Below, in pieces: positions 437 to 40,830 of a DNA stretch of 64,000 bases. The translations under genes were made by a program, and so were the position numbers. The stretch is from positions 370,510-434,509 of the IMG/VR virus record IMGVR_UViG_3300032236_001850, one strand, 5' to 3'. Below the pieces are notes generated by a model, which saw only the letters and a program-made list of their open reading frames with translations, made no database searches and had not been told where the DNA came from. Within the stretch, counting starts at the first letter, position 1; the number at the start of each line of letters is the position of its first letter.

Positions 437-985
437 ATGATTATAAAATCTTTTTCTGAATTTAACGAATCCAATCTGGATGAATCATATTATGATCAAT
501 ATCACGAAACCCATGGTAAGACATCTTTTACCAGATGGCTTAGAAAAATAGGTGATAAAATAGGAATAGGAGATAGTGGATATACCAGTTACTATGCAGA
601 TTCTGATCCCAATTCTGACGCTATACTTAGTGGGAGAAGAGCTATTGCAGCTACTGTAAGTGGACTCGCAAAAGGTACCGCTTCATTTATAGATTTTTTA
701 TCTCCTGGTGAAGATATAAAATCCTGGAAAGATCTTGACAAGGAAGAAATAAAAAGAAGAAAAGAGGAGATTATTAGAAAATGGGAAGCTGAGCATATAG
801 AGAATAAACATGTTACTGACCACGATGCCGAGGAATTTTATAAATCTGGAGTTCTTAGAGGGAAAAAATATTTTGGTAACGATTTTAAGCCACAAGATCC
901 TAAAAGTAAGGATGAAGAGATATACAGAGATTATCTTAGAGATGTAATGAATACCTATTATAGAAAAACCAAAAAGAAAAAATAG
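437..985 (+). CDS. Hypothetical protein with capsid-targeting-like N-terminus
   Basis: Begins MIIKSFSEFNESNLDE. Confidence 0.6.
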   Translation: MIIKSFSEFNESNLDESYYDQYHETHGKTSFTRWLRKIGDKIGIGDSGYTSYYADSDPNSDAILSGRRAIAATVSGLAKGTASFIDFLSPGEDIKSWKDLDKEEIKRRKEEIIRKWEAEHIENKHVTDHDAEEFYKSGVLRGKKYFGNDFKPQDPKSKDEEIYRDYLRDVMNTYYRKTKKKK

Positions 986-996
986 GATGAGTAACG

Positions 997-1917
997 ATGA
1001 ATAGGATACTCAATTTTTCTGATTTTATTTTTGAAGGTGGTGCTGCTATAAAAACTTCCAGAAGAATAAGGGAGGATGAATTTCCAGAAACACTGAAGAG
1101 TATACAGGAAAATCTTTTTCCGCTTATTGGTATGGTTCCTAGCAGAATCAACGATCAATATGTTGTTATTGGTAGTATAGGTAAAAAACAAAATCCCGAG
1201 GATACATCTGGTGATTTAGATATTGGTTATGATGCAATATGGTATTCACAGGATAATGGCATAGAGAAAAAGGAATGTTCTAGTTTTATTTATGAGAAAA
1301 TAAAAAATGGGATTGGTGATGTGCTTGGATTTGTACCAGAGATTAATTATATGAGAGGACTTAATATAGTTAGTTTGGGATGGCCAATAAAGGGTGATGA
1401 AAATAACGGTTTGGTTCAGCTTGACCTTATTCCTTTATCTGATATGGCATGGGCTGATTTCATATATTATTCACCAAACTACAAAGTTGGTGAGAGTAAA
1501 TATAAATCCGCTCATAGAAACTGGCTTTTAGCTGCTATATTATCAGCTAGGAAGGAGATTAGAGAAAGAGATCAATTTGGTGAAATATTGGATTATGATA
1601 CGCCTGTTCTTATTTTAAGTGATGGTCTATATTGGCACACTAAATCATATAGAGGTAAGATAAAAGACAGATTAAAGAATCCTAAAAAAATAGAGGGAAG
1701 CGAGAGATTTATCACTAATGATCCTCAGGAATTTATAGATTTTGCTTTAGGTAAAGGTTATACGGAAGATGACGTTAAAACTTTTGAGAAGTTATTTAAT
1801 ATAGTAATTTCACCTGATTTTGAATTAAAAGATAAATTACCAGAAATAAAGGAAAGATTTTTGGAATTTTTACAAAGAGTTGGACTAGAAATACCTACAG
1901 AGGTTAACGAAATATAA
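997..1917 (+). CDS. Pol-beta-superfamily nucleotidyltransferase with CTS-like N-terminus
   Basis: hGS...SGDLD motif, third Asp in VQLDL; N-terminus MNRILNFSDFIFE. Confidence 0.65.
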   Translation: MNRILNFSDFIFEGGAAIKTSRRIREDEFPETLKSIQENLFPLIGMVPSRINDQYVVIGSIGKKQNPEDTSGDLDIGYDAIWYSQDNGIEKKECSSFIYEKIKNGIGDVLGFVPEINYMRGLNIVSLGWPIKGDENNGLVQLDLIPLSDMAWADFIYYSPNYKVGESKYKSAHRNWLLAAILSARKEIRERDQFGEILDYDTPVLILSDGLYWHTKSYRGKIKDRLKNPKKIEGSERFITNDPQEFIDFALGKGYTEDDVKTFEKLFNIVISPDFELKDKLPEIKERFLEFLQRVGLEIPTEVNEI

Positions 1918-6892: not shown

Positions 6893-7282
6893 ATGTCCAG
6901 AGAGATACTGATACAAGAAAATTATCCTAATGAACCTTGGAAAATGCTCGTTTGTTGTATATTATTAAACCAATCCCATAATAGATCTGTACGACCGATT
7001 TTAGACGCCGTATTTGAATTTATTCCTGATCCTGATTCTGCAATCAAGTGTGATGTTGAAAGTCTAGCAGCGATCATAAAACCAACCGGTTTGTACAACG
7101 TAAAGGCTAGAAGAATAAAATGGATGAGTGTGGGATACAAAAAAGGCTTTAAAAGAGTTACCGATCTACCAGGAATAGGTTTATATGGTAATGAATCCTG
7201 GGAGATATTTGTTAATGGTAATCTCGACATAAAGCCAACGGATAAAAAGCTTAGAGCTTATTTGGATGCCGTTTTATTTTGA
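6893..7282 (+). CDS. HhH-GPD DNA glycosylase, MBD4-like
   Basis: PWKMLVCCILLNQ, LPGIGLYG HhH motif, DKKL ending; no Fe-S cluster. Confidence 0.75.
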   Translation: MSREILIQENYPNEPWKMLVCCILLNQSHNRSVRPILDAVFEFIPDPDSAIKCDVESLAAIIKPTGLYNVKARRIKWMSVGYKKGFKRVTDLPGIGLYGNESWEIFVNGNLDIKPTDKKLRAYLDAVLF

Positions 7283-8245
7283 TATTTTTACTCTTAGATT
7301 TATTGGTTCTTTAAGTACTGGATTTGAAACATAGAAAGGTTTTGCAACTTCACATTTCACAAACTTTTTATTTTCACCTAATGGTAGATATATTACATCA
7401 CCAGGTTTAAACATCTTGTGAATTTTTAATTTTTTACCATCTCTTTCGAATTCAAGATCCATTTCTATATGATCGTCAAATATTGCCCAATTATCTGTTC
7501 TACCAAATTTTTTGAATTTCTTATTAATGATTCTGAAAACCTTACCTGTAACAAATCCATCTTCCCCTAATTTGGATGCAAATTTTATAGGTTTACCTTT
7601 CTTAAGATTATAAGTTTTTATTTTTGAATTATCAAGACCAAAGCTTTCTTTTGGTACTTTCTTTGATTCTTCTTCTGTGAGAACTGTACCATCACTTGAT
7701 ATAAACAATTTAAAATCGTAGTTTTCCTTAGGTTTGGTAACAATATATTTGAGTTTTTCCTCATCGTATTTCACCTTACTTAATCCTGCATGAAATTCTA
7801 TTGACTTGTTTATTTCTTCGTGTGACTCGTCATCTTTAAAAATTCTTATAGTTCTTGCTATATTTTCAATAATTGGGATGTAAATCTGATTTCCCTCTTT
7901 TGCTGATTGCTCGGCTTTTAGATTAGCTGGAACATAAACATTTAGTGGATAAAATTTACCCATAAATTTAAAATGTGTTTCCATCATGGGATAACCGGTT
8001 GCTGTTTTGTCTGGGAATTTTAACCATTTAAGAACCTCATTCAGTCTATGGTCATATTCCTTTGCAAGTAAATCAGCGCAAGATTTTTTAATTTCCTCTA
8101 TTTTTCCGTTATCGAAATAATTAGACAACATGGTGGGAAAATCTATATTTTCTGGTTTGTAAAATCTTTCAATCTCCTCAACATCAACCTTTATGGTTAA
8201 TCTTGCTTCATTTATCCAACCCTGAAATTTTTTTAAATTGTTCAT
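7274..8245 (-). CDS. Hypothetical protein with CTS-like N-terminus
   Basis: MNNLKKFQGWINEA. Confidence 0.6.
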   Translation of the reverse strand: MNNLKKFQGWINEARLTIKVDVEEIERFYKPENIDFPTMLSNYFDNGKIEEIKKSCADLLAKEYDHRLNEVLKWLKFPDKTATGYPMMETHFKFMGKFYPLNVYVPANLKAEQSAKEGNQIYIPIIENIARTIRIFKDDESHEEINKSIEFHAGLSKVKYDEEKLKYIVTKPKENYDFKLFISSDGTVLTEEESKKVPKESFGLDNSKIKTYNLKKGKPIKFASKLGEDGFVTGKVFRIINKKFKKFGRTDNWAIFDDHIEMDLEFERDGKKLKIHKMFKPGDVIYLPLGENKKFVKCEVAKPFYVSNPVLKEPINLRVKISK

Positions 8246-8550
8246 TATTCTTTTTTCTTTGAATTTTTTGCTTGAAATGTTGTTTTTAGATATTCTGTTA
8301 TATCTGATCCTGATTTCTTATCTTCATTCAGAAACTTATTAAATTCCTCGGATTTGCCACATTCATCTAAGAAATCATGAAAGTAGGCTTCTTCGTACAT
8401 GGCATCTATAGTTTCTGGCATTGTTGGATCTGCGCTCTGGTAGTTTCTGCTATTTACTTTGGTCTGATAAGAATCACCTGGAACATCAATACTTCCTGGA
8501 GAATCAATCCATTCATTAACAAAACCTTTAAATTTTTGTAAATTTTTCAT
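8245..8550 (-). CDS. Hypothetical protein with CTS-like N-terminus
   Basis: MKNLQKFKGFVNEW; GATATATA at 8557-8564 on minus strand. Confidence 0.6.
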   Translation of the reverse strand: MKNLQKFKGFVNEWIDSPGSIDVPGDSYQTKVNSRNYQSADPTMPETIDAMYEEAYFHDFLDECGKSEEFNKFLNEDKKSGSDITEYLKTTFQAKNSKKKE

Positions 8551-14122: not shown

Positions 14123-14791
14123 ATGGAAAACAACAAATGGTTTAATGACGATGTCATAAAAAAATTCGATGAATTTTTAAACGAGAGAGAATTACCAGAT
14201 TCTCAGGGGGATGTACTAGTTATGCTAGGAGCTCCTGGCTCCGGTAAAGGAACACTTTCAAAACAGCTGAATGAAAAATTTGGGATAAATCATATATCAA
14301 CTGGTGATCTAATAAGAAAATCCGATGATCCTGAATTGAAGAAAATAGTTGAGTCAGGAAAGTTCATATCCGATGAAATGATGCTTAAAATGCTAAGAAA
14401 AGAGCTAAAAAAGCTTGATCTTAATAAAGGTATAATTTTTGATGGATATCCAAGAACAATAAAACAAGCGAGAAAGCTTGATTCGTTATTGGGTAAATTG
14501 GGTCTTGGTTTAAATCATGCTATATTTATGGATCTTCCGGAGGATAAGGCTAAGGAGAGAATAAGAAATAGAGCTAAGAAGGAGGGAAGAAAGGATGATG
14601 CAAGTGATGAGGTTATAGATAAAAGATTTGCCGAATATCACGAGAAAACTTTTCCTCTTGTTGATTTTTACAAGAAAAGCAGAAAATTAATAAAAATTGA
14701 TGCTGATCTTGGTATGGAAGGAGTTCTTAAATCCATAGTTAAAAAGTTGGGTCTTAAAAAACCTAAAAAGAATAGAGATGAAAAAATCTAG
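14123..14791 (+). CDS. adk: Adenylate kinase with CTS-like N-terminal extension
   Basis: GAPGSGKGT, HISTGDLIR, DGYPRT, RKDD; leader IKKFDEFLNE. Confidence 0.9.
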   Translation: MENNKWFNDDVIKKFDEFLNERELPDSQGDVLVMLGAPGSGKGTLSKQLNEKFGINHISTGDLIRKSDDPELKKIVESGKFISDEMMLKMLRKELKKLDLNKGIIFDGYPRTIKQARKLDSLLGKLGLGLNHAIFMDLPEDKAKERIRNRAKKEGRKDDASDEVIDKRFAEYHEKTFPLVDFYKKSRKLIKIDADLGMEGVLKSIVKKLGLKKPKKNRDEKI

Positions 14792-16756: not shown

Positions 16757-17290
16757 ATGAGACACCTTTTGGAATTTGAATCTTATGAAGGCTTAGATGA
16801 AGCTGGAATACCAATATATAATGCTGATGACTTTAGAAGGAGTCCTTCCAGTGAACCTGAGGATGAGGTATCAACCACTAAAATCTTCTCCTATATAAAG
16901 GATCTATTGGAACAACAAAAAGCTGGACAGATAGAAGAAATCAGTATGACTGTGGATTTACCATTACAAGGTAAAAAAGCTCCACAACACGTTCTTGATA
17001 CTCTTGACGCTGAAAGAAAAAGAATAGAGAAAGAACAGTATGCTATTAGAGGTAGCAGAACAGAAGCAGCTGATGTTGCTCCTGGTGATAATATCTACGG
17101 TGGTGAAGGTAGAAATCTTTTTGTTGATAGTGAGTATATAGTTACAGGAATCACCAATTTGGATGGAACAGATTACATTATAGGATTACCGGTTTCTAAG
17201 AAAAAAGAAGCTTTTAGTTCCCCTGAATCTATAGCTTATTATTCAACTTTTATAGAACCTAAACAAATAGAAGAAGTTTTTTATTCATAG
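16757..17290 (+). CDS. Hypothetical protein with CTS-like N-terminus
   Basis: MRHLLEFESYEGLDEA; GATATATA at 16728-16735. Confidence 0.6.
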   Translation: MRHLLEFESYEGLDEAGIPIYNADDFRRSPSSEPEDEVSTTKIFSYIKDLLEQQKAGQIEEISMTVDLPLQGKKAPQHVLDTLDAERKRIEKEQYAIRGSRTEAADVAPGDNIYGGEGRNLFVDSEYIVTGITNLDGTDYIIGLPVSKKKEAFSSPESIAYYSTFIEPKQIEEVFYS

Positions 17291-24352: not shown

Positions 24353-25498
24353 ATGACTCCAGAAGAAATTAAAGAGATTGAAGAAAAAATAGAGAGGCTC
24401 ACCGCTCTTAAAAATGAGTATAAGAACGAGGAGCAAGCAGTAAAGTTAACAATGAACTCCATCTATGGAGCGATTGGTAACAACTATTTCGTTTGCTTCA
24501 ATCCTGATGTTGCCGAGGCGGTAACCCTCCAGGGTCAGGATCTTATCAAATACTCTGAAAAAATATTACATAAGTATTTCCATGAACATTGGCATCTTGA
24601 CACGGAGCTGCACGAAAAACTTGGATTGACTCAGGTTAAAAGAGTTACAAATCCATTAGTCGTTTATGGAGATACTGATTCTAATTATGTTACATTTCAG
24701 GAGGTGGTGGATTCCTGTGATTATCAGGGGGATGCTAAGGATCTAATTATTAAGATAAATCAATATAGACTTAATGATTATCTTAAAAAATGTTTTGATA
24801 TCTACTCCAAAAAATGGAACACCGAGAACTATCAGGATTTTGAGCTTGAAACACTTGCTATAAATGCTATATTTCTCGGTAAGAAAAAATATGTTGCAAA
24901 TCTTGTTTATGATTCGGGATTGCACATGGAACCTCTTTCAACATTAAAAACCACTGGTGTTGAGATGATTAAGGGAGGTACACCGCCTTTCGTTAGAGAG
25001 AAACTTATCTACTTAACCAAATTGATCTTTAGTAAAGGTAGATCTTTCGATATACGTGAGTTTGTGAAGGAACTTAAATCAATTAAGAAGGAGTTCAAGT
25101 TACAGGAACCTCAGAATATATCGGCTTCCATAAATGTGAATAGCTATGATAAGATACTGAACGATACAACAGGATTTGAAGTTGCTAAGGCTTGTCCTAT
25201 ACATGTTAGAGCATCAGGTTATCACAACTATCTTTTGAACAATTCACCATACAAGACCAAGTACTCGCTCATCCGTGCGGGAGATAAAGTTAATTTATAT
25301 TTTGTAAAAACTAAAAATATAAATGATAGTAACATATTTGCATATCCACAGGGAACATTTCCGTACGAATTTGCTCCGCCTTTGGATTACGATGAACAAT
25401 TCACAAAAACCATTCTTGATCCCATAAACAGATTCATCGAGGTGATGGGATACAACCAAATAAGTCCCAATCTATTTATGGTTAACGCTCTTTTTTAA
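24353..25498 (+). CDS. Family-B DNA polymerase, C-terminal half (motifs B, C, thumb)
   Basis: KLTMNSIYG, YGDTDS, KKKY, CPIHVR. Confidence 0.9.
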   Translation: MTPEEIKEIEEKIERLTALKNEYKNEEQAVKLTMNSIYGAIGNNYFVCFNPDVAEAVTLQGQDLIKYSEKILHKYFHEHWHLDTELHEKLGLTQVKRVTNPLVVYGDTDSNYVTFQEVVDSCDYQGDAKDLIIKINQYRLNDYLKKCFDIYSKKWNTENYQDFELETLAINAIFLGKKKYVANLVYDSGLHMEPLSTLKTTGVEMIKGGTPPFVREKLIYLTKLIFSKGRSFDIREFVKELKSIKKEFKLQEPQNISASINVNSYDKILNDTTGFEVAKACPIHVRASGYHNYLLNNSPYKTKYSLIRAGDKVNLYFVKTKNINDSNIFAYPQGTFPYEFAPPLDYDEQFTKTILDPINRFIEVMGYNQISPNLFMVNALF

Positions 25499-25769: not shown

Positions 25770-25811
25770 TTGTATTGTCTTTAGGATATATACATGATAA
25801 AATAATCAAGG

Positions 25812-27287
25812 ATGATGATATCAAAAAATGTACTGGACTTTTCCTCTTTTCTAAACGAAGCAAAATCCAATGCTGTTCAGGTAATTATGCTAATAGGAGG
25901 TGGAACCAATGAGTTCTCAAGATCCTTTGAAGCAGAGTGTAAGAAGAAAAAAATAAAGGTAACTGTATTTGACGTTGATCTTGCCGAAGTTACCAGAAAT
26001 AAAACCGGTGGTGGACACACAGTAACGGAAGGCAAAAAAATTGCTTCCATAGATCCATCAAATACTGTTGTTATTGCTAGATCTGGGTGTCTTAAGAGCA
26101 CACATAATAAGGAGCTTCTTATGGAGCTTGAAAATTCTAAATATTATGTTGTGAATAGATTAAGACCGATGGAAATATGTGAAAATAAATACATCACATC
26201 AGAGTTTCTTGAAAATTTAGATTTACCCGTTCCTAGATATTCTCTTATAGCATCTGAAGATCATATAGATGCAGCAGTTAAAAAAATCGGTGGTAAATTT
26301 CCAGTTGTTATGAAACTTCTTACTGGATCTCAAGGTATTGGTGTTTCCATTATTGATTCTCCAAATTCACTTAAATCTGTTTATCAAACAATTAAAAAAC
26401 TTGACGAGAAGAGTGAGGTATTAATACAGGAAAAAATAGAATCCAAATACGATCTAAGGATACATGTTATTATTAGAGACACAAGTATTAAAAATATAAA
26501 TAACACTGATAACTTCAAGGTTATTGGTGCTATGAGAAGAAATGCAGTTGGTAAGGATTTCAGAACAAATTATTCCCTTGGTGGAACGGTATCTAATGTT
26601 AAACTTAGTAAGGAAGTAATTGAAACAGCAATTAAAGCTGCTAGTGCAGTTGGATGTAATTGGTGTGGTGTTGATATAATGATCGACGAGAAAACTAAAA
26701 AACCTTACATATTGGAAGTTAATTCATCTCCTGGTACTGAGGGCATATCTAAAGCATTAGGTAAACCTATTGTGGATGATGTTATAAAATTTGTAATGAA
26801 CAGAGAAAATTGGGTTATACCTTCATCAGAAGTTGGTTACTTAGAGGTTATGGAAATAGAGGGTCTAGGTAAGGTGATAGCTAAATTTGATACTGGTAAT
26901 GGTACTCTTTGTTGTTGTTTACATGGTGATAAATTGGAGGTTAAAGGTAAAACCTTACATTTCCAAATAGGTCATAAAAAATTCACAAAAAAAATAACTG
27001 GATATACTGATGTTTCTGGTGGTATGCACACTAAAGGAACAAAGAAAATGCCAACGGTTAAGATGGATTTAAAATTTGATGGTGCATGGACAAAAGATGT
27101 TGATGTTGCAATAGTAGATAGAACAGATAAGAGCACACCATTTTTAGTTAATAGAAAAACTATGAGACAAATGAATGTTATAGTAAATCCAAACACAAAA
27201 TTCATAGTTACTGAAAATTTTGACGATAGATATAGTCAATATACATCAAAAGGAAAACCTCATGCAGGTATTGAATTTGAAAAATAA
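25812..27287 (+). CDS. rimK: RimK-family ATP-grasp ligase fused to a retropepsin-like (RimB / 'ATP-dependent Zn protease') domain
   Basis: GSQGIGV, DFRTNYSLGG, GVD, EVNSSPG; AKFDTG..LVNR protease motif; leader VLDFSSFLNEA; GATATATA at 25785. Confidence 0.8.
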   Translation: MMISKNVLDFSSFLNEAKSNAVQVIMLIGGGTNEFSRSFEAECKKKKIKVTVFDVDLAEVTRNKTGGGHTVTEGKKIASIDPSNTVVIARSGCLKSTHNKELLMELENSKYYVVNRLRPMEICENKYITSEFLENLDLPVPRYSLIASEDHIDAAVKKIGGKFPVVMKLLTGSQGIGVSIIDSPNSLKSVYQTIKKLDEKSEVLIQEKIESKYDLRIHVIIRDTSIKNINNTDNFKVIGAMRRNAVGKDFRTNYSLGGTVSNVKLSKEVIETAIKAASAVGCNWCGVDIMIDEKTKKPYILEVNSSPGTEGISKALGKPIVDDVIKFVMNRENWVIPSSEVGYLEVMEIEGLGKVIAKFDTGNGTLCCCLHGDKLEVKGKTLHFQIGHKKFTKKITGYTDVSGGMHTKGTKKMPTVKMDLKFDGAWTKDVDVAIVDRTDKSTPFLVNRKTMRQMNVIVNPNTKFIVTENFDDRYSQYTSKGKPHAGIEFEK

Positions 27288-27302
27288 AAATAAATAAATA
27301 GA

Positions 27303-27530
27303 ATGGAAAACTTAAGAGAATTCGGAAAAATTAACTCTAGATTAAGCGAGTCCGAAGAAAAAGCAGAAAAAGACGAAAAGATCCAAGTTTTGCTTTCTGG
27401 TGAAGATTTAAGTGATCTAACAAGAAAGATAGCGAAAAAAGCTTTATCTAAAGGTGAAGCTCCTGTATCTGTATCTCACTATGTTAGATCACTAATTAGA
27501 AGAGATCTTGGTAAAACTACTAAAGACTAA
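27303..27530 (+). CDS. Ribbon-helix-helix-like DNA-binding protein
   Basis: IQVLLS..DL..SVSHYVRSLIRRDL. Confidence 0.5.
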   Translation: MENLREFGKINSRLSESEEKAEKDEKIQVLLSGEDLSDLTRKIAKKALSKGEAPVSVSHYVRSLIRRDLGKTTKD

Positions 27531-28006
27531 TTCTTACCGAAAAAATCAGTGTATGATAAAACCCTACGGTCATTAGATTGTGGGGTTTCTTCTTGATTAC
27601 CAGTTTCCATCTCTGCATCATCAGGTTCAGATAAATCATCTTCATCCTCCTCGTCGTAATCTGCATCGTCGTCATCCTCATACTCCTCATCTGGATTTTC
27701 TACCTCCTCGTCATCCTCGTACTCTTCGTCTGGATTTTCTACCTCTTCATCATCATCGTAGTCTGAGTTGTCTTCATCTTCCTCATACTCTGAGTCGTCA
27801 TAGTCCTCATCCTCCTCGTCGTATTCATCATCATAATCCTCATCTTCTGATTCGTCGTCATATGTTTCATAATCATCGTTACCGTAGTCTGAGTCATCGG
27901 TATCATAAGTTTCATACTCCTCTCCATATTCACCTGATTGTGAATCGTCACCAGATAGATATGAATCGTCATTAATAAACTCGTCTTCTTCTTTTAAATG
28001 TTTCAT
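27527..28006 (-). CDS. Extremely acidic (Asp/Glu/Tyr) protein
   Basis: D/E-dominated; EEVENPDEEYEDD twice; ends VLSYTDFF. Confidence 0.7.
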   Translation of the reverse strand: MKHLKEEDEFINDDSYLSGDDSQSGEYGEEYETYDTDDSDYGNDDYETYDDESEDEDYDDEYDEEDEDYDDSEYEEDEDNSDYDDDEEVENPDEEYEDDEEVENPDEEYEDDDDADYDEEDEDDLSEPDDAEMETGNQEETPQSNDRRVLSYTDFFGKN

Positions 28007-28028: not shown

Positions 28029-28040
28029 AATATATATATC
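28029..28040. promoter_or_regulatory. Possibly bidirectional (TA)n late promoter
   Basis: GATATATA on minus strand (28033-28040) between two divergent CTS-motif genes. Confidence 0.5.
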
Positions 28041-28064: not shown

Positions 28065-28376
28065 ATGTCCGCTATACTGGAATTTTCCGAATTTAATGAT
28101 TCTAATCTAACAGATTCTGAAATGAGAACGATTAAGGAATGGGTTAAGAAATATGAAAAATATTTTAATTTTCACGATGGTGAAAATTTTGATTCCTCTA
28201 TAGATCAGTTAGCATCAGATGTTATGTCACAGACTGGCATAGATCAATCAAAAACTAATGATGTTGTTTCTTATCTTGAGGAGCTATATTCACTGTCGGA
28301 CGGATTATCTGTTGTTATGGCACCGGATAGACAATTTCAAGATACCGATATAGACCAATTAACAAGATTTTGGTAA
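28065..28376 (+). CDS. Hypothetical protein with CTS-like N-terminus
   Basis: MSAILEFSEFND. Confidence 0.6.
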   Translation: MSAILEFSEFNDSNLTDSEMRTIKEWVKKYEKYFNFHDGENFDSSIDQLASDVMSQTGIDQSKTNDVVSYLEELYSLSDGLSVVMAPDRQFQDTDIDQLTRFW

Positions 28377-28443: not shown

Positions 28444-29361
28444 ATGAAACCAGTTAAAGCAATATATGTGGATTGGCATATGCCAAAAAAGGATGCTGGG
28501 AAGAATATACCAGAAAAAAGACCATGGGAGATTGCCATGATTATAAGATCCGTTTATTTTGCTAAAAAATATAATGATCTTTCACCGGTTCTTTATTGTG
28601 ATCCTGATACATATTCATATTATGACGAGATTGGATTACTTAAACATTTCGACGAGGTTAAACCCATATTACCAACAAATCTTAATTTTGATGCCTCTGT
28701 ATTCTGGGCTGCTGGAAAATTTTATGCAATTCTTGATTGTAATGAGCCCTTTATATTAATAGATCTTGATGCTGAGGTTAGATTCAAAATAGATTTTGGT
28801 GATTGTGATATTTACTGTACACATCTGGAAAAAGTAATTAAGGATGATTTAAAATTCTATCCTGATGCTGAATATCTGGATCGGGATAACTATATAGCAA
28901 ATAAATTTGGTATAACCTGGAGCAATCATGCTTGTAACACATGTTTACTTGCTTTTAACGATCTTGATTTTGCCAAGGAGTATGCAACTATGGCTTTGGA
29001 TTTTATCGATCATATTTATGAACTTAATCCAGCATTTAGCAATGTTTCGTACATTGTTTTAATAGAGCAAAGATTCCTTTATGATTTGGCAATGAGTAGA
29101 GGAAAAAAGATAAATTGTCTCATTAGTGGAAACTATTTACCAACGAATCATACCGTTGGACTTCCTTCCTTTGAAGATTCAGATGTTGATGAAATTGCGG
29201 ATAAGGGATTTTTCCATGTTTGGGGTTTTAAAAACGACATAAAAAGAAGTAAGGATGTCGAGGATTCCTTTCTTGGTGATCTTGTAACTGGTGTTGATGA
29301 CATACATAATGATCTTATTTACTCAATTTCCATGAACCATAAATTATATATAGATAAATAA
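28444..29361 (+). CDS. GT-A-fold protein (DUF6734-like)
   Basis: FWAAGK, IDLD (DxD), EQRFL, HVWG. Confidence 0.6.
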   Translation: MKPVKAIYVDWHMPKKDAGKNIPEKRPWEIAMIIRSVYFAKKYNDLSPVLYCDPDTYSYYDEIGLLKHFDEVKPILPTNLNFDASVFWAAGKFYAILDCNEPFILIDLDAEVRFKIDFGDCDIYCTHLEKVIKDDLKFYPDAEYLDRDNYIANKFGITWSNHACNTCLLAFNDLDFAKEYATMALDFIDHIYELNPAFSNVSYIVLIEQRFLYDLAMSRGKKINCLISGNYLPTNHTVGLPSFEDSDVDEIADKGFFHVWGFKNDIKRSKDVEDSFLGDLVTGVDDIHNDLIYSISMNHKLYIDK

Positions 29362-30539: not shown

Positions 30540-30980
30540 ATGAAATTTTTAATCGCATTATTATTTTTTATATCCTTTGGATATTCACAAAAGTCTGGTA
30601 TTTGTGGTGCATCCTTTTCATATTCTAAGAAAAGTAACAGTATCCTACTAAATACCCCTATTTCATTATTTCAAACCGAGGATGCAGATTACCACGTTAG
30701 AGTTAGGCTGAGAAGAGAAGTTCCGATTGGTGCGATTAATGGTGTTGAATATGGAAACATGATAGAACAACCATTTTTTGAATATGATGGTTATAAAACA
30801 TCCATGTTTTGGGCATTTAGCACATTAACATCAGTAAAACATAAAGTAAAAAAGAAAGGCACAATAGACACTAATTTTGAACTATTTTACACCAAAAAAG
30901 GTGAGTATTTTATGACAATAGATAAAATGTGCTATGATAATGTAATAGAATCAAATGAGGTTTCAATAACAATAAAATAA
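30540..30980 (+). CDS. Secreted hypothetical protein
   Basis: Signal peptide ending GYS|Q. Confidence 0.55.
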   Translation: MKFLIALLFFISFGYSQKSGICGASFSYSKKSNSILLNTPISLFQTEDADYHVRVRLRREVPIGAINGVEYGNMIEQPFFEYDGYKTSMFWAFSTLTSVKHKVKKKGTIDTNFELFYTKKGEYFMTIDKMCYDNVIESNEVSITIK

Positions 30981-31717
30981 TGGAAGCATTTTTAGAAAAG
31001 ATAAATGGCGAGTGGTTGGATGATTTTGTTTATATAGCAAAACAACCATTAATAGATATGGGATATAAAATAGTCCCGTATGATGGTGATGATTTGGAAC
31101 ACACGCTAGTGATGAGAAATCCAGATCCCAACACTGATATTTGTATAGGATCTGTGCAGGGAACTGAAAGATTTTTTCAAGCCTGTGGAGTTGAGATCCC
31201 TAAATATTTGGGTTATCCTGAGCAGCTTAGAAAGTATCTTGGTAGAAAAATAGAAACAACAACCTTTGGGGAACTTGGTACAGATTTTCCATATTTTGTG
31301 AAGCCTGCTGAATCTATTAAAATGTTTACCGGTGATGTTGTGGATAATTCTAAACATCTTGAATACCTGGTTGCTTTTGATAAATGCCTTCCAGATACAC
31401 CCGTTATAAAATCAGAGGTCATGGAATTTCTCTCAGAATATAGAGTTTTTGTTAGTCATGGTAAAATCTATGACGTTAAACACTACAAAGGAACATGGAA
31501 GGAACATATTAGCTCTAATATCATTGAGTTAATGGTTAAGGATTACACAGACTGTCCTTCTGCATACACATTGGATGTGGGTCTGAATTCAAAAGGTCTA
31601 ACAAAGTTAGTTGAGGTGAATGATATGTGGGCTATAGGATCTTATGGTATGGATGGAAGGGACTATGCATTATTGTGTGCCAGAAGAATGAAAGAAATAT
31701 TAAAAAATTATAAATAA
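30980..31717 (+). CDS. ATP-grasp protein (DUF4343/R2K-like)
   Basis: FVKP, SEYRVFV, YTLDVG, LVEVND. Confidence 0.75.
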   Translation: MEAFLEKINGEWLDDFVYIAKQPLIDMGYKIVPYDGDDLEHTLVMRNPDPNTDICIGSVQGTERFFQACGVEIPKYLGYPEQLRKYLGRKIETTTFGELGTDFPYFVKPAESIKMFTGDVVDNSKHLEYLVAFDKCLPDTPVIKSEVMEFLSEYRVFVSHGKIYDVKHYKGTWKEHISSNIIELMVKDYTDCPSAYTLDVGLNSKGLTKLVEVNDMWAIGSYGMDGRDYALLCARRMKEILKNYK

Positions 31718-39958: not shown

Positions 39959-40351
39959 ATGGAAAGAATAAAAAGTTTTGATTTATTTGAGGATGAAAGT
40001 ATTGGTCCTCCTGAACAAAAAATATACAGTAAATATTACCAGGGACCTTCTGCCTGGCCTACAGTTGTTGATGCGTTAGCTATTATTAGTAAAAATCAAA
40101 ACGGAGATGGAGATGGAGATGGTTTAGTAAAGCCATCACAGGAGCTAGTTGATTTTATTAAAGACAACAGTTCGGAGGATGGATTAGATAGTTCAATAGC
40201 AGGATTTTTTACTGAAATATTGAAAGCAGTTAAAATTGCTAATAGTAGTTTATATACCAAACTGGGTGGAGAATCAATGATTAGAGCTATTGAGGGAATG
40301 CAGAACGATTACGTTGCTACCCACAACACAGATGGTACTAAAAAATTCTAA
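39959..40351 (+). CDS. Hypothetical protein with CTS-like N-terminus
   Basis: MERIKSFDLFEDES; GATATATA at 39934. Confidence 0.6.
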   Translation: MERIKSFDLFEDESIGPPEQKIYSKYYQGPSAWPTVVDALAIISKNQNGDGDGDGLVKPSQELVDFIKDNSSEDGLDSSIAGFFTEILKAVKIANSSLYTKLGGESMIRAIEGMQNDYVATHNTDGTKKF

Positions 40352-40395: not shown

Positions 40396-40830
40396 ATGGA
40401 AAGAATAGCTTCATTTGAACAATTCAAAAGAAATGGCGCATCAATGGATGAATATAATTCTGAGATAGAGGCAACAAACGAAAATAGTACGGATGACAAA
40501 AAACATTATATGTTTTTTAGAAATGTGCAATCAATCAAGCACTATATTGATGAGATCATGAAAATGGACAAAGATAAAATCGATGAACTTCTTGAGGATG
40601 GTCATGATTGGGCTGCTGATCACATATCAACCGCTAAAACAGACATTGAGGAAGTTGCTGAATGGTTAAGAGACGAATTTGAAGATGCAGAGGAATCTGA
40701 CGATGAGGAAGAAAATGAACCGGAGGAAGCAGAAGAAACTGAGGAGGAACCAGAAGGTGAGGAATCTGATGAAACAGGAGAAGAACCAGAAGGGGAGGAA
40801 GAGGAAAAAACAGGAAAGGAACCTCTATAA
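40396..40830 (+). CDS. Hypothetical protein with CTS-like N-terminus and Glu-rich tail
   Basis: MERIASFEQF; EEPEGEE repeats. Confidence 0.6.
   Translation: MERIASFEQFKRNGASMDEYNSEIEATNENSTDDKKHYMFFRNVQSIKHYIDEIMKMDKDKIDELLEDGHDWAADHISTAKTDIEEVAEWLRDEFEDAEESDDEEENEPEEAEETEEEPEGEESDETGEEPEGEEEEKTGKEPL

What the first reader, a model, noticed from the sequence alone, without database searches (positions are those of the whole stretch)
25812..28006. Writer-eraser fusion: RimK ligase plus retropepsin-like domain, next to a poly-acidic protein
Seen: RimK and a DTG-motif protease in one chain with a CTS-like leader and late promoter; a convergent, extremely D/E-rich protein lies nearby. Known: RimK glutamylates ribosomal S6, and the adjacent RimB protease trims poly-Glu in Pseudomonas. 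Inference: an injected enzyme that resets ribosome glutamylation or makes poly-Glu, with acidic phage proteins (27527, 40396) as possible substrates.
Basis: partly seen in the sequence, partly recalled or inferred. Interest (0 to 1): 0.6.

Follow-up and report, generated by a model that had tools for sequence, protein, structure and literature searches.

The report
Phage RimK–RimB fusion with capsid-targeting leader
A 434-kb freshwater phage encodes one protein that joins a glutamate-adding ligase (RimK) to a glutamate-trimming protease (RimB-like), behind a short leader that looks like the tag phage T4 uses to load proteins into its head; the fusion itself was first seen in 2008, but its likely delivery into the host with the DNA is new and testable.

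Summary
ORF 25812..27287 (+, 491 aa) has three parts. Residues 1-19 are a disordered leader. Residues about 22-334 are a RimK-family ATP-grasp ligase. Residues about 338-462 are a DUF785/RimB-type retropepsin-like domain with an invariant FDTGNG motif, and a model predicts it pairs through that motif. A convergent ORF (27527..28006) is 53% Asp+Glu.

The fusion is not new. Marine T4-like phage RimK with a C-terminal DUF785 was reported in 2008, and a bacterial RimB-RimK hybrid in the opposite order was shown to be an active protease in 2025.

Two things are new. First, the leader has the spacing of the T4 capsid-targeting sequence. It recurs on 22 unrelated ORFs of this genome (1.7 expected) and on nearly all phage homologues. 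Second, a conserved GATATATA promoter-like motif precedes the gene, and also the portal and prohead-protease genes.

My best reading is a late-made, head-packaged enzyme that is ejected into the host, analogous to T4 Alt, and sets poly-glutamate tails, with S6 the canonical but untested target.

The acidic neighbour is probably not its substrate. It has no Glu run longer than 2, whereas characterised RimB needs 5-6.

Packaging, enzyme activity and target are all inferred.

The parts
25785..25792 (+). Promoter-like motif GATATATA (within GGATATATAC), 27 nt upstream of the ATG. Probably this phage group's late-type promoter.
   Evidence: The sequence was read directly. The motif [GA]ATATATA precedes 85 of 630 ORFs, including the portal (C1:282552) and prohead protease (C1:296799). 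It precedes 11 of 23 leader ORFs (Fisher p=5e-5). It is kept at -24..-34 in 37 of 48 distinct upstream regions of homologues whose flanking sequence has diverged.
25812..25859 (+). N-terminal leader, residues 1-16, ending ...F-S-S-F-L-N-E. The inferred cleavage point is after E16.
   Evidence: Residues 1-19 are disordered in the model (pLDDT below 50). N15 and E16 are invariant and F10 and F13 nearly invariant in 25 homologues. The spacing [FYW]-x-x-[FYW]-[LIV]-x-E equals that of the T4 CTS MKTYQEFIAE. The motif occurs at the N-termini of 22 ORFs of the genome, against 1.74 expected.
25875..26813 (+). RimK-family ATP-grasp alpha-L-glutamate ligase domain (residues about 22-334), with ExN motif E302-V-N304.
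26823..27197 (+). DUF785/RimB-type retropepsin-like aspartic peptidase domain (residues about 338-462). The catalytic motif D360-T-G lies at nt 26889-26897.
   Evidence: The homodimer model places the DTG motif at the interface (score 0.47 against a best control of 0.00).
27198..27287 (+). C-terminal tail (residues 463-491) with conserved G481, G486 and I487 (...HAGIxF...). It is mostly disordered and its role is unknown. The range includes the stop codon.
27303..27530 (+). Conserved 58-76 aa protein immediately downstream (core KIQVLLS...PVS-SHYVR-LIR). By eye it has a ribbon-helix-helix-like pattern, but no family match supports this.
   Evidence: It is conserved in five relatives. There is no Pfam or PHROG hit.
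27527..28006 (-). Convergent acidic, low-complexity protein (159 aa, 53% D+E) with a conserved C-terminal motif (R/K)-V-(L/M)-x-(F/Y)-x-D-(F/Y)-(F/V/I). It overlaps the previous gene's end by 4 nt and has its own GATATATA motif at 28033-28040 (-).
28065..28376 (+). Conserved 103-112 aa protein with a leader-like N-terminus (ILEFxEF). It is the last member of the conserved four-gene block.

Best explanation
The gene encodes a bifunctional poly-alpha-glutamate 'tail-setting' enzyme that the phage makes late, loads into its head and delivers into the next host with the DNA.

Shown by sequence and models:
- a RimK-family ATP-grasp ligase fused to a DUF785/RimB-type retropepsin-like domain;
- a catalytic DTG motif that is invariant and lies at a predicted symmetric dimer interface;
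- a 16-20 residue add-on at the N-terminus with the spacing of the T4 capsid-targeting sequence (aromatic at -7 and -4, L/I/V at -3, Glu at -1);
- a conserved promoter-like motif that the gene shares with head genes.

Inferred:
1. The leader docks the protein in the prohead core.
2. The T4-type prohead protease cuts after E16.
3. The mature enzyme stays in the capsid and is ejected into the host, as T4 Alt is.
4. In the host, the ligase adds alpha-linked Glu to a protein C-terminus or makes free poly-Glu. The canonical target would be host ribosomal protein bS6.
5. The dimeric protease domain trims the tail and stimulates the ligase, as RimB does with RimK. Tail length would then be fixed independently of the host's own regulation.
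For: Domains:
- Both domains, the ExN motif and the DTG motif are invariant across homologues down to 48% identity.
- More than 900 full-length homologues were found, and at least 94 IMG/VR contigs of up to 430 kb carry one. This indicates strong purifying selection on the whole fusion.
- Dimer model: ipSAE 0.47 (three runs: 0.47-0.49) against a best control of 0.00. Partner pLDDT was 86 and the runs shared at least 83% of contacts. The mark was reached by 20 of 30 solved homodimers and 1 of 23 monomers. The interface is residues 24-29 (KFDTGN) and 122-127 of the domain.

Function of the parts in bacteria (PMC11957791):
- RimB is a retropepsin-like endopeptidase whose catalytic Asp lies in a DTG motif.
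- It removes Glu from glutamylated RpsF and stimulates poly-Glu synthesis by RimK.
- A natural RimB-RimK hybrid is an active protease.

Leader:
- It matches the T4 CTS, in which positions 4 and 7 govern targeting and positions 8 and 10 govern processing. The CTS sequence is confirmed.
- It occurs 22 times at ORF N-termini, against 1.74 +/- 1.34 in shuffles that keep N-terminal composition (maximum 7 in 1000).
- The strict form occurs 8 times at N-termini, against 0.18 expected from the rate at internal positions.
- It sits on unrelated enzymes as an add-on ahead of the catalytic domain: adenylate kinase, RNase T-type exonuclease, a MoxR-type AAA ATPase, and CHAP, glucosaminidase and YkuD/Tlde1 cell-wall enzymes.
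- It is present in nearly all of 59 distinct phage homologues and in Pelagibacter phage Mosig.
- Bacterial-context relatives of the C-terminal domain lack it.

Other support:
- The genome encodes a T4-type prohead protease.
- The promoter-like motif is shared with the portal and protease genes and is conserved upstream of homologues.
- The YerA41 homologue was detected in purified particles.
Against: - There is no direct evidence of cleavage, packaging, ejection or either enzyme activity.
- The YerA41 particle proteome also lists ribonucleotide reductase, dUTPase, ligase and polymerases, so carry-over is likely. The gene is classed as middle-expressed there, and its N-terminus fits the leader poorly.
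- Looser leader-like N-termini appear on perhaps 50 ORFs. That is a very large cargo set, and it could instead reflect a shared 5' gene cassette or a translation-related constraint.
- The protein scores far below the S6-ligase equivalog model (89.5 bits against 331) and scores similarly on MptN (132 bits), so the acceptor is open.
- The host is unknown and no S6 sequence could be examined.
- The protease domain is below Pfam's threshold as a single sequence.
Confidence: 0.5

Rival explanations
1. The enzyme chemistry is the same but the protein is not packaged. It would be an ordinary cytoplasmic phage enzyme acting during the infection that makes it. The shared N-terminal motif would then serve another purpose: a translation-initiation or mRNA constraint, a common 5' cassette spread by recombination, or a tag for another phage structure or chaperone.
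For: The gene lies in the replication module next to the topoisomerase, a clamp-like gene and DNA polymerase, and lies between regA and gene 43 in Mosig. The YerA41 homologue is a middle gene. Leader-like N-termini and the promoter motif occur together at a fixed distance on many small ORFs, as mobile promoter cassettes would. Monier et al. proposed a T7-kinase-like role in translation during infection.
Against: The motif is kept at the protein level, with invariant Asn-Glu and aromatic residues, across homologues of 33-50% identity whose DNA has diverged. Its enrichment survives shuffles that preserve N-terminal composition. Cell-wall hydrolases that carry the leader have no signal peptide and need some route out of the cytoplasm. 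The spacing equals that of the T4 CTS.
Confidence: 0.3
2. The enzyme works on phage proteins, and the neighbouring acidic protein (27527..28006) and the acidic-tailed protein at 40396 are its substrates. They would be glutamylated by the ligase or cut by the protease, for instance inside the prohead.
For: The acidic ORF keeps its place two genes downstream in relatives down to about 50% identity. It has a promoter motif of the same class. Its C-terminal motif resembles the leader, so both proteins might meet at the same site.
Against: The longest Glu run is 2 (3 in relatives), whereas characterised RimB needs 5-6 contiguous Glu and ignores poly-Asp. In two relatives the protein is only 26-28% acidic. 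Its C-terminus is not acidic. The pairing is absent in Mosig and YerA41. The whole genome has a single run of five Glu. The C-terminal tail could equally be a sliding-clamp-binding tail like those of T4 gp33 and gp43; that comparison is from memory and untested.
Confidence: 0.08
3. The ligase domain acts on a small molecule or a nucleic-acid base rather than a protein. It could glutamylate a cofactor, as MptN and CofF do, or take part in DNA hypermodification. The C-terminal domain would then be a regulatory or binding module.
For: The MptN model scores nearly as high as the RimK family model (132 against 144 bits). The gene sits among nucleotide and replication genes in three unrelated phages. 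YerA41 has heavily modified thymidine.
Against: The closest structures and sequences are true RimK proteins. An invariant DTG motif at a predicted retropepsin-type dimer interface argues for a peptide substrate. The bacterial RimB/RimK pair acts on a protein tail and on poly-Glu. No known base-modification genes were seen beside it in this window.
Confidence: 0.07

Closest known systems
Putative phage RimK with C-terminal DUF785 from marine metagenomes (Monier, Claverie and Ogata 2008, PMC2530865)
   Same: The domain order is the same (ATP-grasp, then DUF785). The T4-like phage context next to regA, DNA polymerase and clamp-loader genes is the same. The sequences are closer to each other than to cellular RimK. 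The Mosig homologue (33% identity) sits between regA and gene 43.
   Different: The 2008 report treated DUF785 as a domain of unknown function and did not note the N-terminal leader, the promoter or any link to the virion. The present copy is in a 434-kb freshwater phage whose polymerase is nearest to huge uncultured phages.
Pseudomonas RimK with RimB, and the bacterial RimBK hybrid from Desulfotalea (Little et al. 2025, PMC11957791; Grenga et al. 2020)
   Same: The two catalytic modules are the same. The ATP-grasp domain matches RimK (target TM-score 0.87). The protease domain has the DUF785 fold with a DTG motif. The expected dimeric protease is reproduced in the model.
   Different: The domain order is reversed: the bacterial hybrid has RimB at the N-terminus. 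There is no RimA or c-di-GMP partner. There is an added leader. Identity to RimK is 24-26% and identity to DUF785 structures is about 20%. Activity and specificity are untested.
T4 internal proteins and Alt, loaded through the capsid-targeting sequence
   Same: The leader is N-terminal and has the same spacing of the residues that matter in T4 (Y4 and F7 for targeting, I8 and E10 for processing). The genome encodes a T4-type prohead protease. The cargo is a host-modifying enzyme, as Alt is.
   Different: The leader is longer and variable before the motif. It is used on at least 22 different proteins, against a handful in T4. Nothing has been shown experimentally for this phage group.
Cyanophage RimK-only genes (PHROG 2599, annotated 'ribosomal protein S6 glutaminyl transferase')
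   Same: The ATP-grasp domain is homologous (27-30% identity).
   Different: In those records the tblastn match ends at about query residue 316-333. No protease domain or leader was matched, and I did not inspect those proteins directly.

Membership tests
RimK family alpha-L-glutamate ligases (PF08443 / TIGR00768) | ATP-grasp fold of the RimK type, scoring above the family thresholds | tested here: met
   PF08443 scores 113.5 bits (cut-off 21). TIGR00768 scores 143.9 bits (cut-off 143.4, a bare pass). Foldseek gives target TM-score 0.87 to RimK 7qys.
RimK family alpha-L-glutamate ligases (PF08443 / TIGR00768) | Conserved nucleotide- and metal-binding motifs, including the ExN motif | tested here: met
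   K168, the G-rich loop G172-G177, D288 and E302-x-N304 are invariant in 25 homologues and align with RimK 7qyr. ExN is the standard ATP-grasp motif.
30S ribosomal protein S6--L-glutamate ligase (equivalog NF007764) | A score above the equivalog cut-off, which implies the same substrate | tested here: not met
   The score is 89.5 bits against a cut-off of 331. MptN scores 132 bits (cut-off 350) and LysX 93.5 bits.
30S ribosomal protein S6--L-glutamate ligase (equivalog NF007764) | Adds Glu to the C-terminus of S6 | not testable with these tools
   The host is unknown and the phage encodes no S6.
DUF785 / RimB / RloA retropepsin-like peptidases (PF05618) | Retropepsin-like fold of the DUF785 type | tested here: met
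   Foldseek matches 2pma at 1.5e-7 and 9g59 at 5.3e-7 (target TM-scores 0.74-0.78), then HIV-1 protease. The domain profile hits 2pma at 5.4e-8 over the whole domain.
DUF785 / RimB / RloA retropepsin-like peptidases (PF05618) | Pfam gathering score for the single sequence | tested here: not met
   The score is 18.2 bits against 27, and only the C-terminal half matches. RloA2 scores 31.9 bits against 250. This is a divergent subfamily.
DUF785 / RimB / RloA retropepsin-like peptidases (PF05618) | Catalytic Asp in a D-T/S-G motif | tested here: met
   D360-T-G is invariant and aligns with the DTG of 2pma and 9g59. RimB D31 in its DTG motif is essential.
DUF785 / RimB / RloA retropepsin-like peptidases (PF05618) | Homodimer that brings the two catalytic Asp residues together | tested here: met
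   This rests on a model only. The score is 0.47 against a best control of 0.00, with D26-D26, T27-T27 and G28-G28 contacts. Likeness to solved retropepsin dimers may help the score.
DUF785 / RimB / RloA retropepsin-like peptidases (PF05618) | Cleaves runs of glutamate | not testable with these tools
   This needs an enzyme assay.
Bacterial RimBK hybrid | RimB domain N-terminal to RimK in one chain | tested here: not met
   Both domains are present but in the reverse order.
Phage RimK with C-terminal DUF785 (Monier et al. 2008) | ATP-grasp followed by DUF785, in a T4-like phage and near replication genes | tested here: met
T4-type capsid-targeted (CTS) head proteins | N-terminal propeptide with aromatic residues at -7 and -4, L/I/V at -3 and Glu at -1 | tested here: met
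   The leader reads F10-S-S-F13-L14-N-E16. The T4 rule is given, and the genome-wide enrichment.
T4-type capsid-targeted (CTS) head proteins | A T4-type prohead protease encoded by the phage | tested here: met
   PF03420 scores 36.3 bits (cut-off 27) at C1:296907-297239.
T4-type capsid-targeted (CTS) head proteins | Expressed with head genes | tested here: inconclusive
   The gene shares a promoter-like motif with the portal and protease genes. No RNA data exist. The YerA41 homologue is a middle gene.
T4-type capsid-targeted (CTS) head proteins | Cleaved and present inside the capsid | not testable with these tools
   The only evidence is indirect: the YerA41 homologue appears in a particle proteome of 63 proteins.

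The most novel reading that the evidence does not exclude
This clade of huge phages uses a T4-like capsid-targeting leader to load dozens of different enzymes into the head: cell-wall hydrolases, an exonuclease, adenylate kinase, a MoxR ATPase and the RimK-RimB fusion. The fusion would then be the first known ribosome-modifying enzyme delivered ready-made with the phage DNA, rewriting the poly-Glu tail of host S6, or flooding the cell with poly-Glu, before any phage gene is expressed.
Probability: 0.22. Interest if true: 0.8.

Novelty: new variant of a known kind. Interest (0 to 1): 0.55.

Why it matters
RimK/RimB is a recently understood way for bacteria to retune their ribosomes. This phage family is widespread, with more than 900 full-length homologues and at least 94 IMG/VR viral contigs. 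The ligase and protease are welded together in it and appear to be tagged for the capsid. That would mean viruses hijack this switch, possibly from the first seconds of infection.

The leader also gives a simple sequence rule for predicting the ejected-protein cargo of huge uncultured phages. These phages cannot yet be grown, and most of their proteins have no assigned function. Both ideas can be tested with standard biochemistry and with virion proteomics on cultured carriers (Mosig, YerA41).

Tried and rejected
- T4 late-promoter consensus TATAAATA. It is not enriched in the window (14 found, 11.1 expected) and is not upstream of the gene. Only 8 of 630 ORFs have it within 80 nt. I replaced it with the GATATATA motif.
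- Near-identical DNA in cultured phages: none.
- Family searches for the acidic ORF, the 75-aa ORF and the 103-aa ORF: nothing credible, even at E<=5. The ribbon-helix-helix reading of the 75-aa protein therefore remains a guess.
- A phage-encoded S6 or a second RimK: none.
- Poly-Glu substrates in the phage proteome: only one run of five Glu.
- tRNAs in the window: none.
- RNA runs to map transcript starts: none are held.
- Bacterial genomes with the same domain order. The nine hits were either phage-like contigs binned into Bacteroidota or Firmicutes MAGs, or 57% GC bacterial proteins whose N-terminal part gives no RimK Pfam hit. I did not establish a cellular RimK-then-RimB form here; Monier et al. 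cite one in Halobacteria.
- The downstream genes in Mosig and YerA41 are unrelated to the window's module.
- I did not test the idea that the acidic protein's tail binds the sliding clamp, because the single complex job went to the protease dimer.
Full report
**What is there**

The window is the last 64 kb of a complete 434,509-bp virus genome with direct terminal repeats and 35% G+C. The genome encodes a T4-type major capsid protein, two portal paralogues and a T4-type prohead protease. Its DNA polymerase is closest to uncultured huge phages of 634-735 kb and to Lak phages. Near-identical DNA occurs in pond, aquatic and viral metagenomes from at least three independent studies.

The flagged ORF is 25812..27287 on the + strand and encodes 491 aa. 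It follows genes for a topoisomerase II subunit, a clamp-like protein and a separately encoded C-terminal piece of DNA polymerase B.

**Domain calls**

- **RimK domain.** Residues about 22-334 are a RimK-family ATP-grasp domain.
  - Pfam PF08443 gives E=1.2e-32.
  - TIGR00768 scores 143.9 bits against a cut-off of 143.4.
  - The best solved relatives are Pseudomonas and E. coli RimK, at E=1.9e-23 to 6e-20.
  - The AlphaFold model (mean pLDDT 80.9) superposes on RimK with target TM-score 0.87.
- **Protease domain.** Residues about 338-462 match Pfam's PF05618 only weakly as a single sequence (18.2 bits, below the cut-off).
  - A profile of 25 homologues hits the DUF785 structure 2pma (5.4e-8) and the Pseudomonas retropepsin-like peptidase RloA2, 9g59 (6e-8). 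The match runs over the whole domain and the DTG motifs align.
  - A separate model of the domain (pLDDT 83.6) matches 2pma, 9g59 and 9g58, then HIV-1 protease.
- **Conservation.** In an alignment of 25 homologues down to 48% identity, several motifs are invariant: the ATP-grasp lysine, the glycine loop, the E-x-N motif and F-D-T-G-N-G.
- **Dimer.** A two-copy prediction of the protease domain passed the tool's mark.
  - The score was 0.47 against a best control of 0.00.
  - The runs shared at least 83% of contacts and partner pLDDT was 86.
  - The mark was reached by 20 of 30 solved homodimers and 1 of 23 monomers.
  - The DTG motifs of the two copies face each other.
  - This is a model that may lean on known retropepsin dimers, not a measurement.

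**How common it is, and what was known**

- The word search found 942 relatives, and the listed ones are almost all 480-515 aa and full length.
- At least 94 IMG/VR contigs of up to 430 kb carry the fusion.
- Among cultured phages, Pelagibacter phage Mosig (33% identity, annotated as glutathione synthetase, between regA and gene 43) and Yersinia phages YerA41 and GN1 have the full fusion. Cyanophages match over the ligase part only.
- The architecture is not new. Monier, Claverie and Ogata (2008) described phage-like marine contigs with RimK next to regA and noted a C-terminal DUF785 domain in several of them.
- In 2020-2025 the Malone laboratory characterised RimB of Pseudomonas.
  - It belongs to this same domain family.
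  - It is a retropepsin-like endopeptidase that removes glutamates from glutamylated RpsF and stimulates poly-Glu synthesis by RimK.
  - A natural hybrid, RimBK, with the protease at the N-terminus, is active.
- The phage protein therefore has the known parts in the reverse order to that bacterial hybrid.

**The leader**

Residues 1-19 are disordered in the model and lie ahead of the RimK fold. They end in F-S-S-F-L-N-E. The Asn-Glu pair is invariant and the two Phe residues are nearly invariant among homologues. Mosig has F-K-N-Y-L-E-E at the same place, and nearly all of 59 distinct IMG/VR homologues carry a variant.

The spacing is aromatic, two residues, aromatic, L/I/V, one residue, Glu. 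That is exactly the spacing of the T4 capsid-targeting sequence MKTYQEFIAE. In that sequence, residues 4 and 7 govern targeting and residues 8 and 10 govern processing by the prohead protease.

Across 630 ORFs of the genome:
- The motif occurs 22 times within the first 21 residues. Shuffles of each protein's own N-terminus give 1.74 +/- 1.34, with a maximum of 7 in 1000.
- A stricter form occurs 8 times at N-termini, against 0.18 expected from its rate at internal positions.

The carriers are unrelated to one another. They include adenylate kinase (window 14123..14791), an RNase T-type exonuclease, a MoxR-type AAA ATPase, and CHAP, glucosaminidase and YkuD/Tlde1-type cell-wall enzymes, plus many proteins with no family match. 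In the adenylate kinase and in the RimK fusion, the leader is an add-on ahead of a domain that in cellular enzymes starts at the N-terminus. The cell-wall enzymes have no signal peptide, which fits delivery from the virion.

Relatives of the C-terminal domain that sit in a bacterial, 57% G+C context lack the leader.

**The promoter**

The T4 late consensus TATAAATA is not upstream and is not enriched. Instead GATATATA lies 27 nt before the ATG.

- The motif [GA]ATATATA precedes 85 of 630 ORFs, mostly at -25 to -35.
- These include a portal gene, the prohead protease gene and many large genes of the structural region.
- It precedes 11 of the 23 leader ORFs (odds ratio 6.6, p=5e-5).
- Upstream of the fusion gene it is kept at -24 to -34 in 37 of 48 distinct homologous loci whose surrounding sequence differs.

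I read it as a promoter class shared with head genes. Timing could not be checked because no RNA runs hold this phage.

**The neighbours**

In relatives of 50-90% identity the fusion is followed by the same block:
- A small protein of 58-76 aa.
- A convergent acidic protein of 103-159 aa, whose end usually overlaps the previous gene by 4 nt.
- A protein of 103-112 aa with a leader-like N-terminus.

The acidic protein's body is low-complexity and drifts freely, from 26% to 53% D+E. Its last dozen residues are conserved as (R/K)-V-(L/M)-x-(F/Y)-x-D-(F/Y)-(F/V/I). That motif resembles the leader but has no Glu at the cleavage position. It also resembles, from memory only, the clamp-binding tails of T4 gp33 and gp43.

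The acidic protein is a poor candidate substrate, for four reasons:
- Characterised RimB needs five to six contiguous Glu and does not cut poly-Asp.
- This protein has no Glu run longer than two, and the whole genome has one run of five.
- Its C-terminus is not acidic.
- The block is absent from Mosig and YerA41.

**Most likely mechanism**

- **Shown:** the two catalytic modules with intact motifs, the add-on leader with T4 CTS spacing, a prohead protease of the T4 family, and a shared promoter-like motif.
- **Inferred:**
  1. The protein is expressed late.
  2. The leader docks it in the prohead core.
  3. The prohead protease cleaves it after Glu16.
  4. It is retained in the capsid and ejected with the DNA.
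  5. In the host it synthesises and trims alpha-linked Glu tails.
- **Target:** host S6 is the textbook target, but the sequence misses the S6-ligase equivalog model (89.5 bits against 331) and scores similarly on MptN. The acceptor is therefore open.
- **YerA41:** the homologue was found in purified particles. That list of 63 proteins includes ribonucleotide reductase, dUTPase and polymerases, and the gene is middle-expressed there, so it is weak support.
- **My estimates:**
  - about 0.95 for the domain identities;
  - about 0.7 that both activities are real;
  - about 0.5 for packaging;
  - about 0.3 for S6 as the target.

**Rivals**

The rivals are an unpackaged cytoplasmic enzyme whose leader has another role, action on the acidic phage proteins, and a small-molecule or DNA-modification ligase. 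The evidence for and against each is listed in the Rival explanations section.

**Verdict**

The fusion is a member of a phage family first noticed in 2008 and is now interpretable through RimB. The new element is the capsid-targeting-type leader and head-gene-type promoter, which this gene shares with a large set of other enzymes in the same genome.

No alternative genetic code was used.

Noticed in passing
window 437..985, 997..1917, 7274..8245 (-), 8245..8550 (-), 14123..14791, 16757..17290, 28065..28376, 39959..40351, 40396..40830; elsewhere in the genome e.g. C1:103412-104257, 138358-139179, 139734-140414, 201730-203992, 229735-230541: Many unrelated ORFs start with the same kind of leader (M-x-x-I/L-K-x-F-x-x-F-I/L-x-E). 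Twenty-two fit the CTS-like rule, and perhaps 50 fit looser forms such as F-E-x-F-E. Carriers include adenylate kinase, an exonuclease, a MoxR ATPase and three cell-wall enzymes. This may define the phage's ejected cargo.
   Followed up: partly
genome-wide; in the window e.g. 25785-25792 (+), 28033-28040 (-), 28029-28036 (+): The promoter-like motif [GA]ATATATA lies 25-35 nt (or 12 nt) before 85 ORFs, including the portal and prohead protease. Between 28007 and 28064 one alternating AT stretch serves both divergent genes. The T4 TATAAATA consensus is not used.
   Followed up: partly
window 30980..31717 (+): A second ATP-grasp enzyme lies 3.7 kb downstream. It belongs to the R2K.2 family (PF18299, E=1.6e-40), a clade predicted to modify proteins in phage-host conflicts (PMC4431377). 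The phage may carry two different peptide-ligase-type modifiers.
   Followed up: no
window 27527..28006 (-) and relatives L020:8617-9027, L021:7666-8019, L022:6677-7027, L023:6671-6994, L024:6662-6973: An acidic disordered protein with a free-drifting body has a conserved C-terminal motif (R/K)V(L/M)x(F/Y)xD(F/Y)(F/V/I). It resembles the N-terminal leader, and also clamp-binding tails of T4 late-transcription and replication proteins (from memory). It could be a gp33-like factor or a head-core component.
   Followed up: partly
window 27303..27530 (+): A small conserved protein lies right after the ligase gene and has no family match. By eye it has a ribbon-helix-helix-like pattern. Five of six orthologues end in Asp. 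Its end overlaps the convergent acidic gene by 4 nt in four of six loci. It is a possible regulator or, less likely, a carrier-protein-type substrate.
   Followed up: partly
window 24353..25498 (+); L021:2403-3107: DNA polymerase B is split. The C-terminal 381 aa (with the YGDTDS motif) is a separate ORF, and in one relative a neighbouring polymerase piece carries a weak intein hit.
   Followed up: no
genome C1:282552-284186 and 284461-285717; C1:296799-298763: There are two tandem T4-type portal paralogues. The prohead protease domain lies inside a 654-aa ORF, much longer than T4 gp21.
   Followed up: no
L027-L030 (freshwater Bacteroidota MAG contigs, 57% G+C): Bacterial-context proteins of about 400 aa have a C-terminal domain 34-39% identical to the phage protease domain. 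Their N-terminal part gives no RimK Pfam hit and they have no leader. Their neighbours are FabD, polyprenyl synthetase and PhoH.
   Followed up: partly
L031-L033 (gut Firmicutes MAG contigs, one of 410 kb): More distant fusions (29-38% identity in the protease domain) have a leader-like start (for example M-K-R-F-S-D-F-L). In L032 and L033 an acidic low-complexity linker lies before the RimK domain. I did not check whether these contigs are phages.
   Followed up: no
window 28444..29361 (+): A DUF6734 protein (E=5.4e-12) is conserved near the module in relatives. Its function is unknown.
   Followed up: no
L002:9988-10368 (Yersinia phage YerA41_074): The record notes similarity to LysW, the carrier protein used by the RimK-family ligase LysX. 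The gene lies 4 kb from the YerA41 fusion gene, so it is a possible protein substrate in that phage.
   Followed up: no
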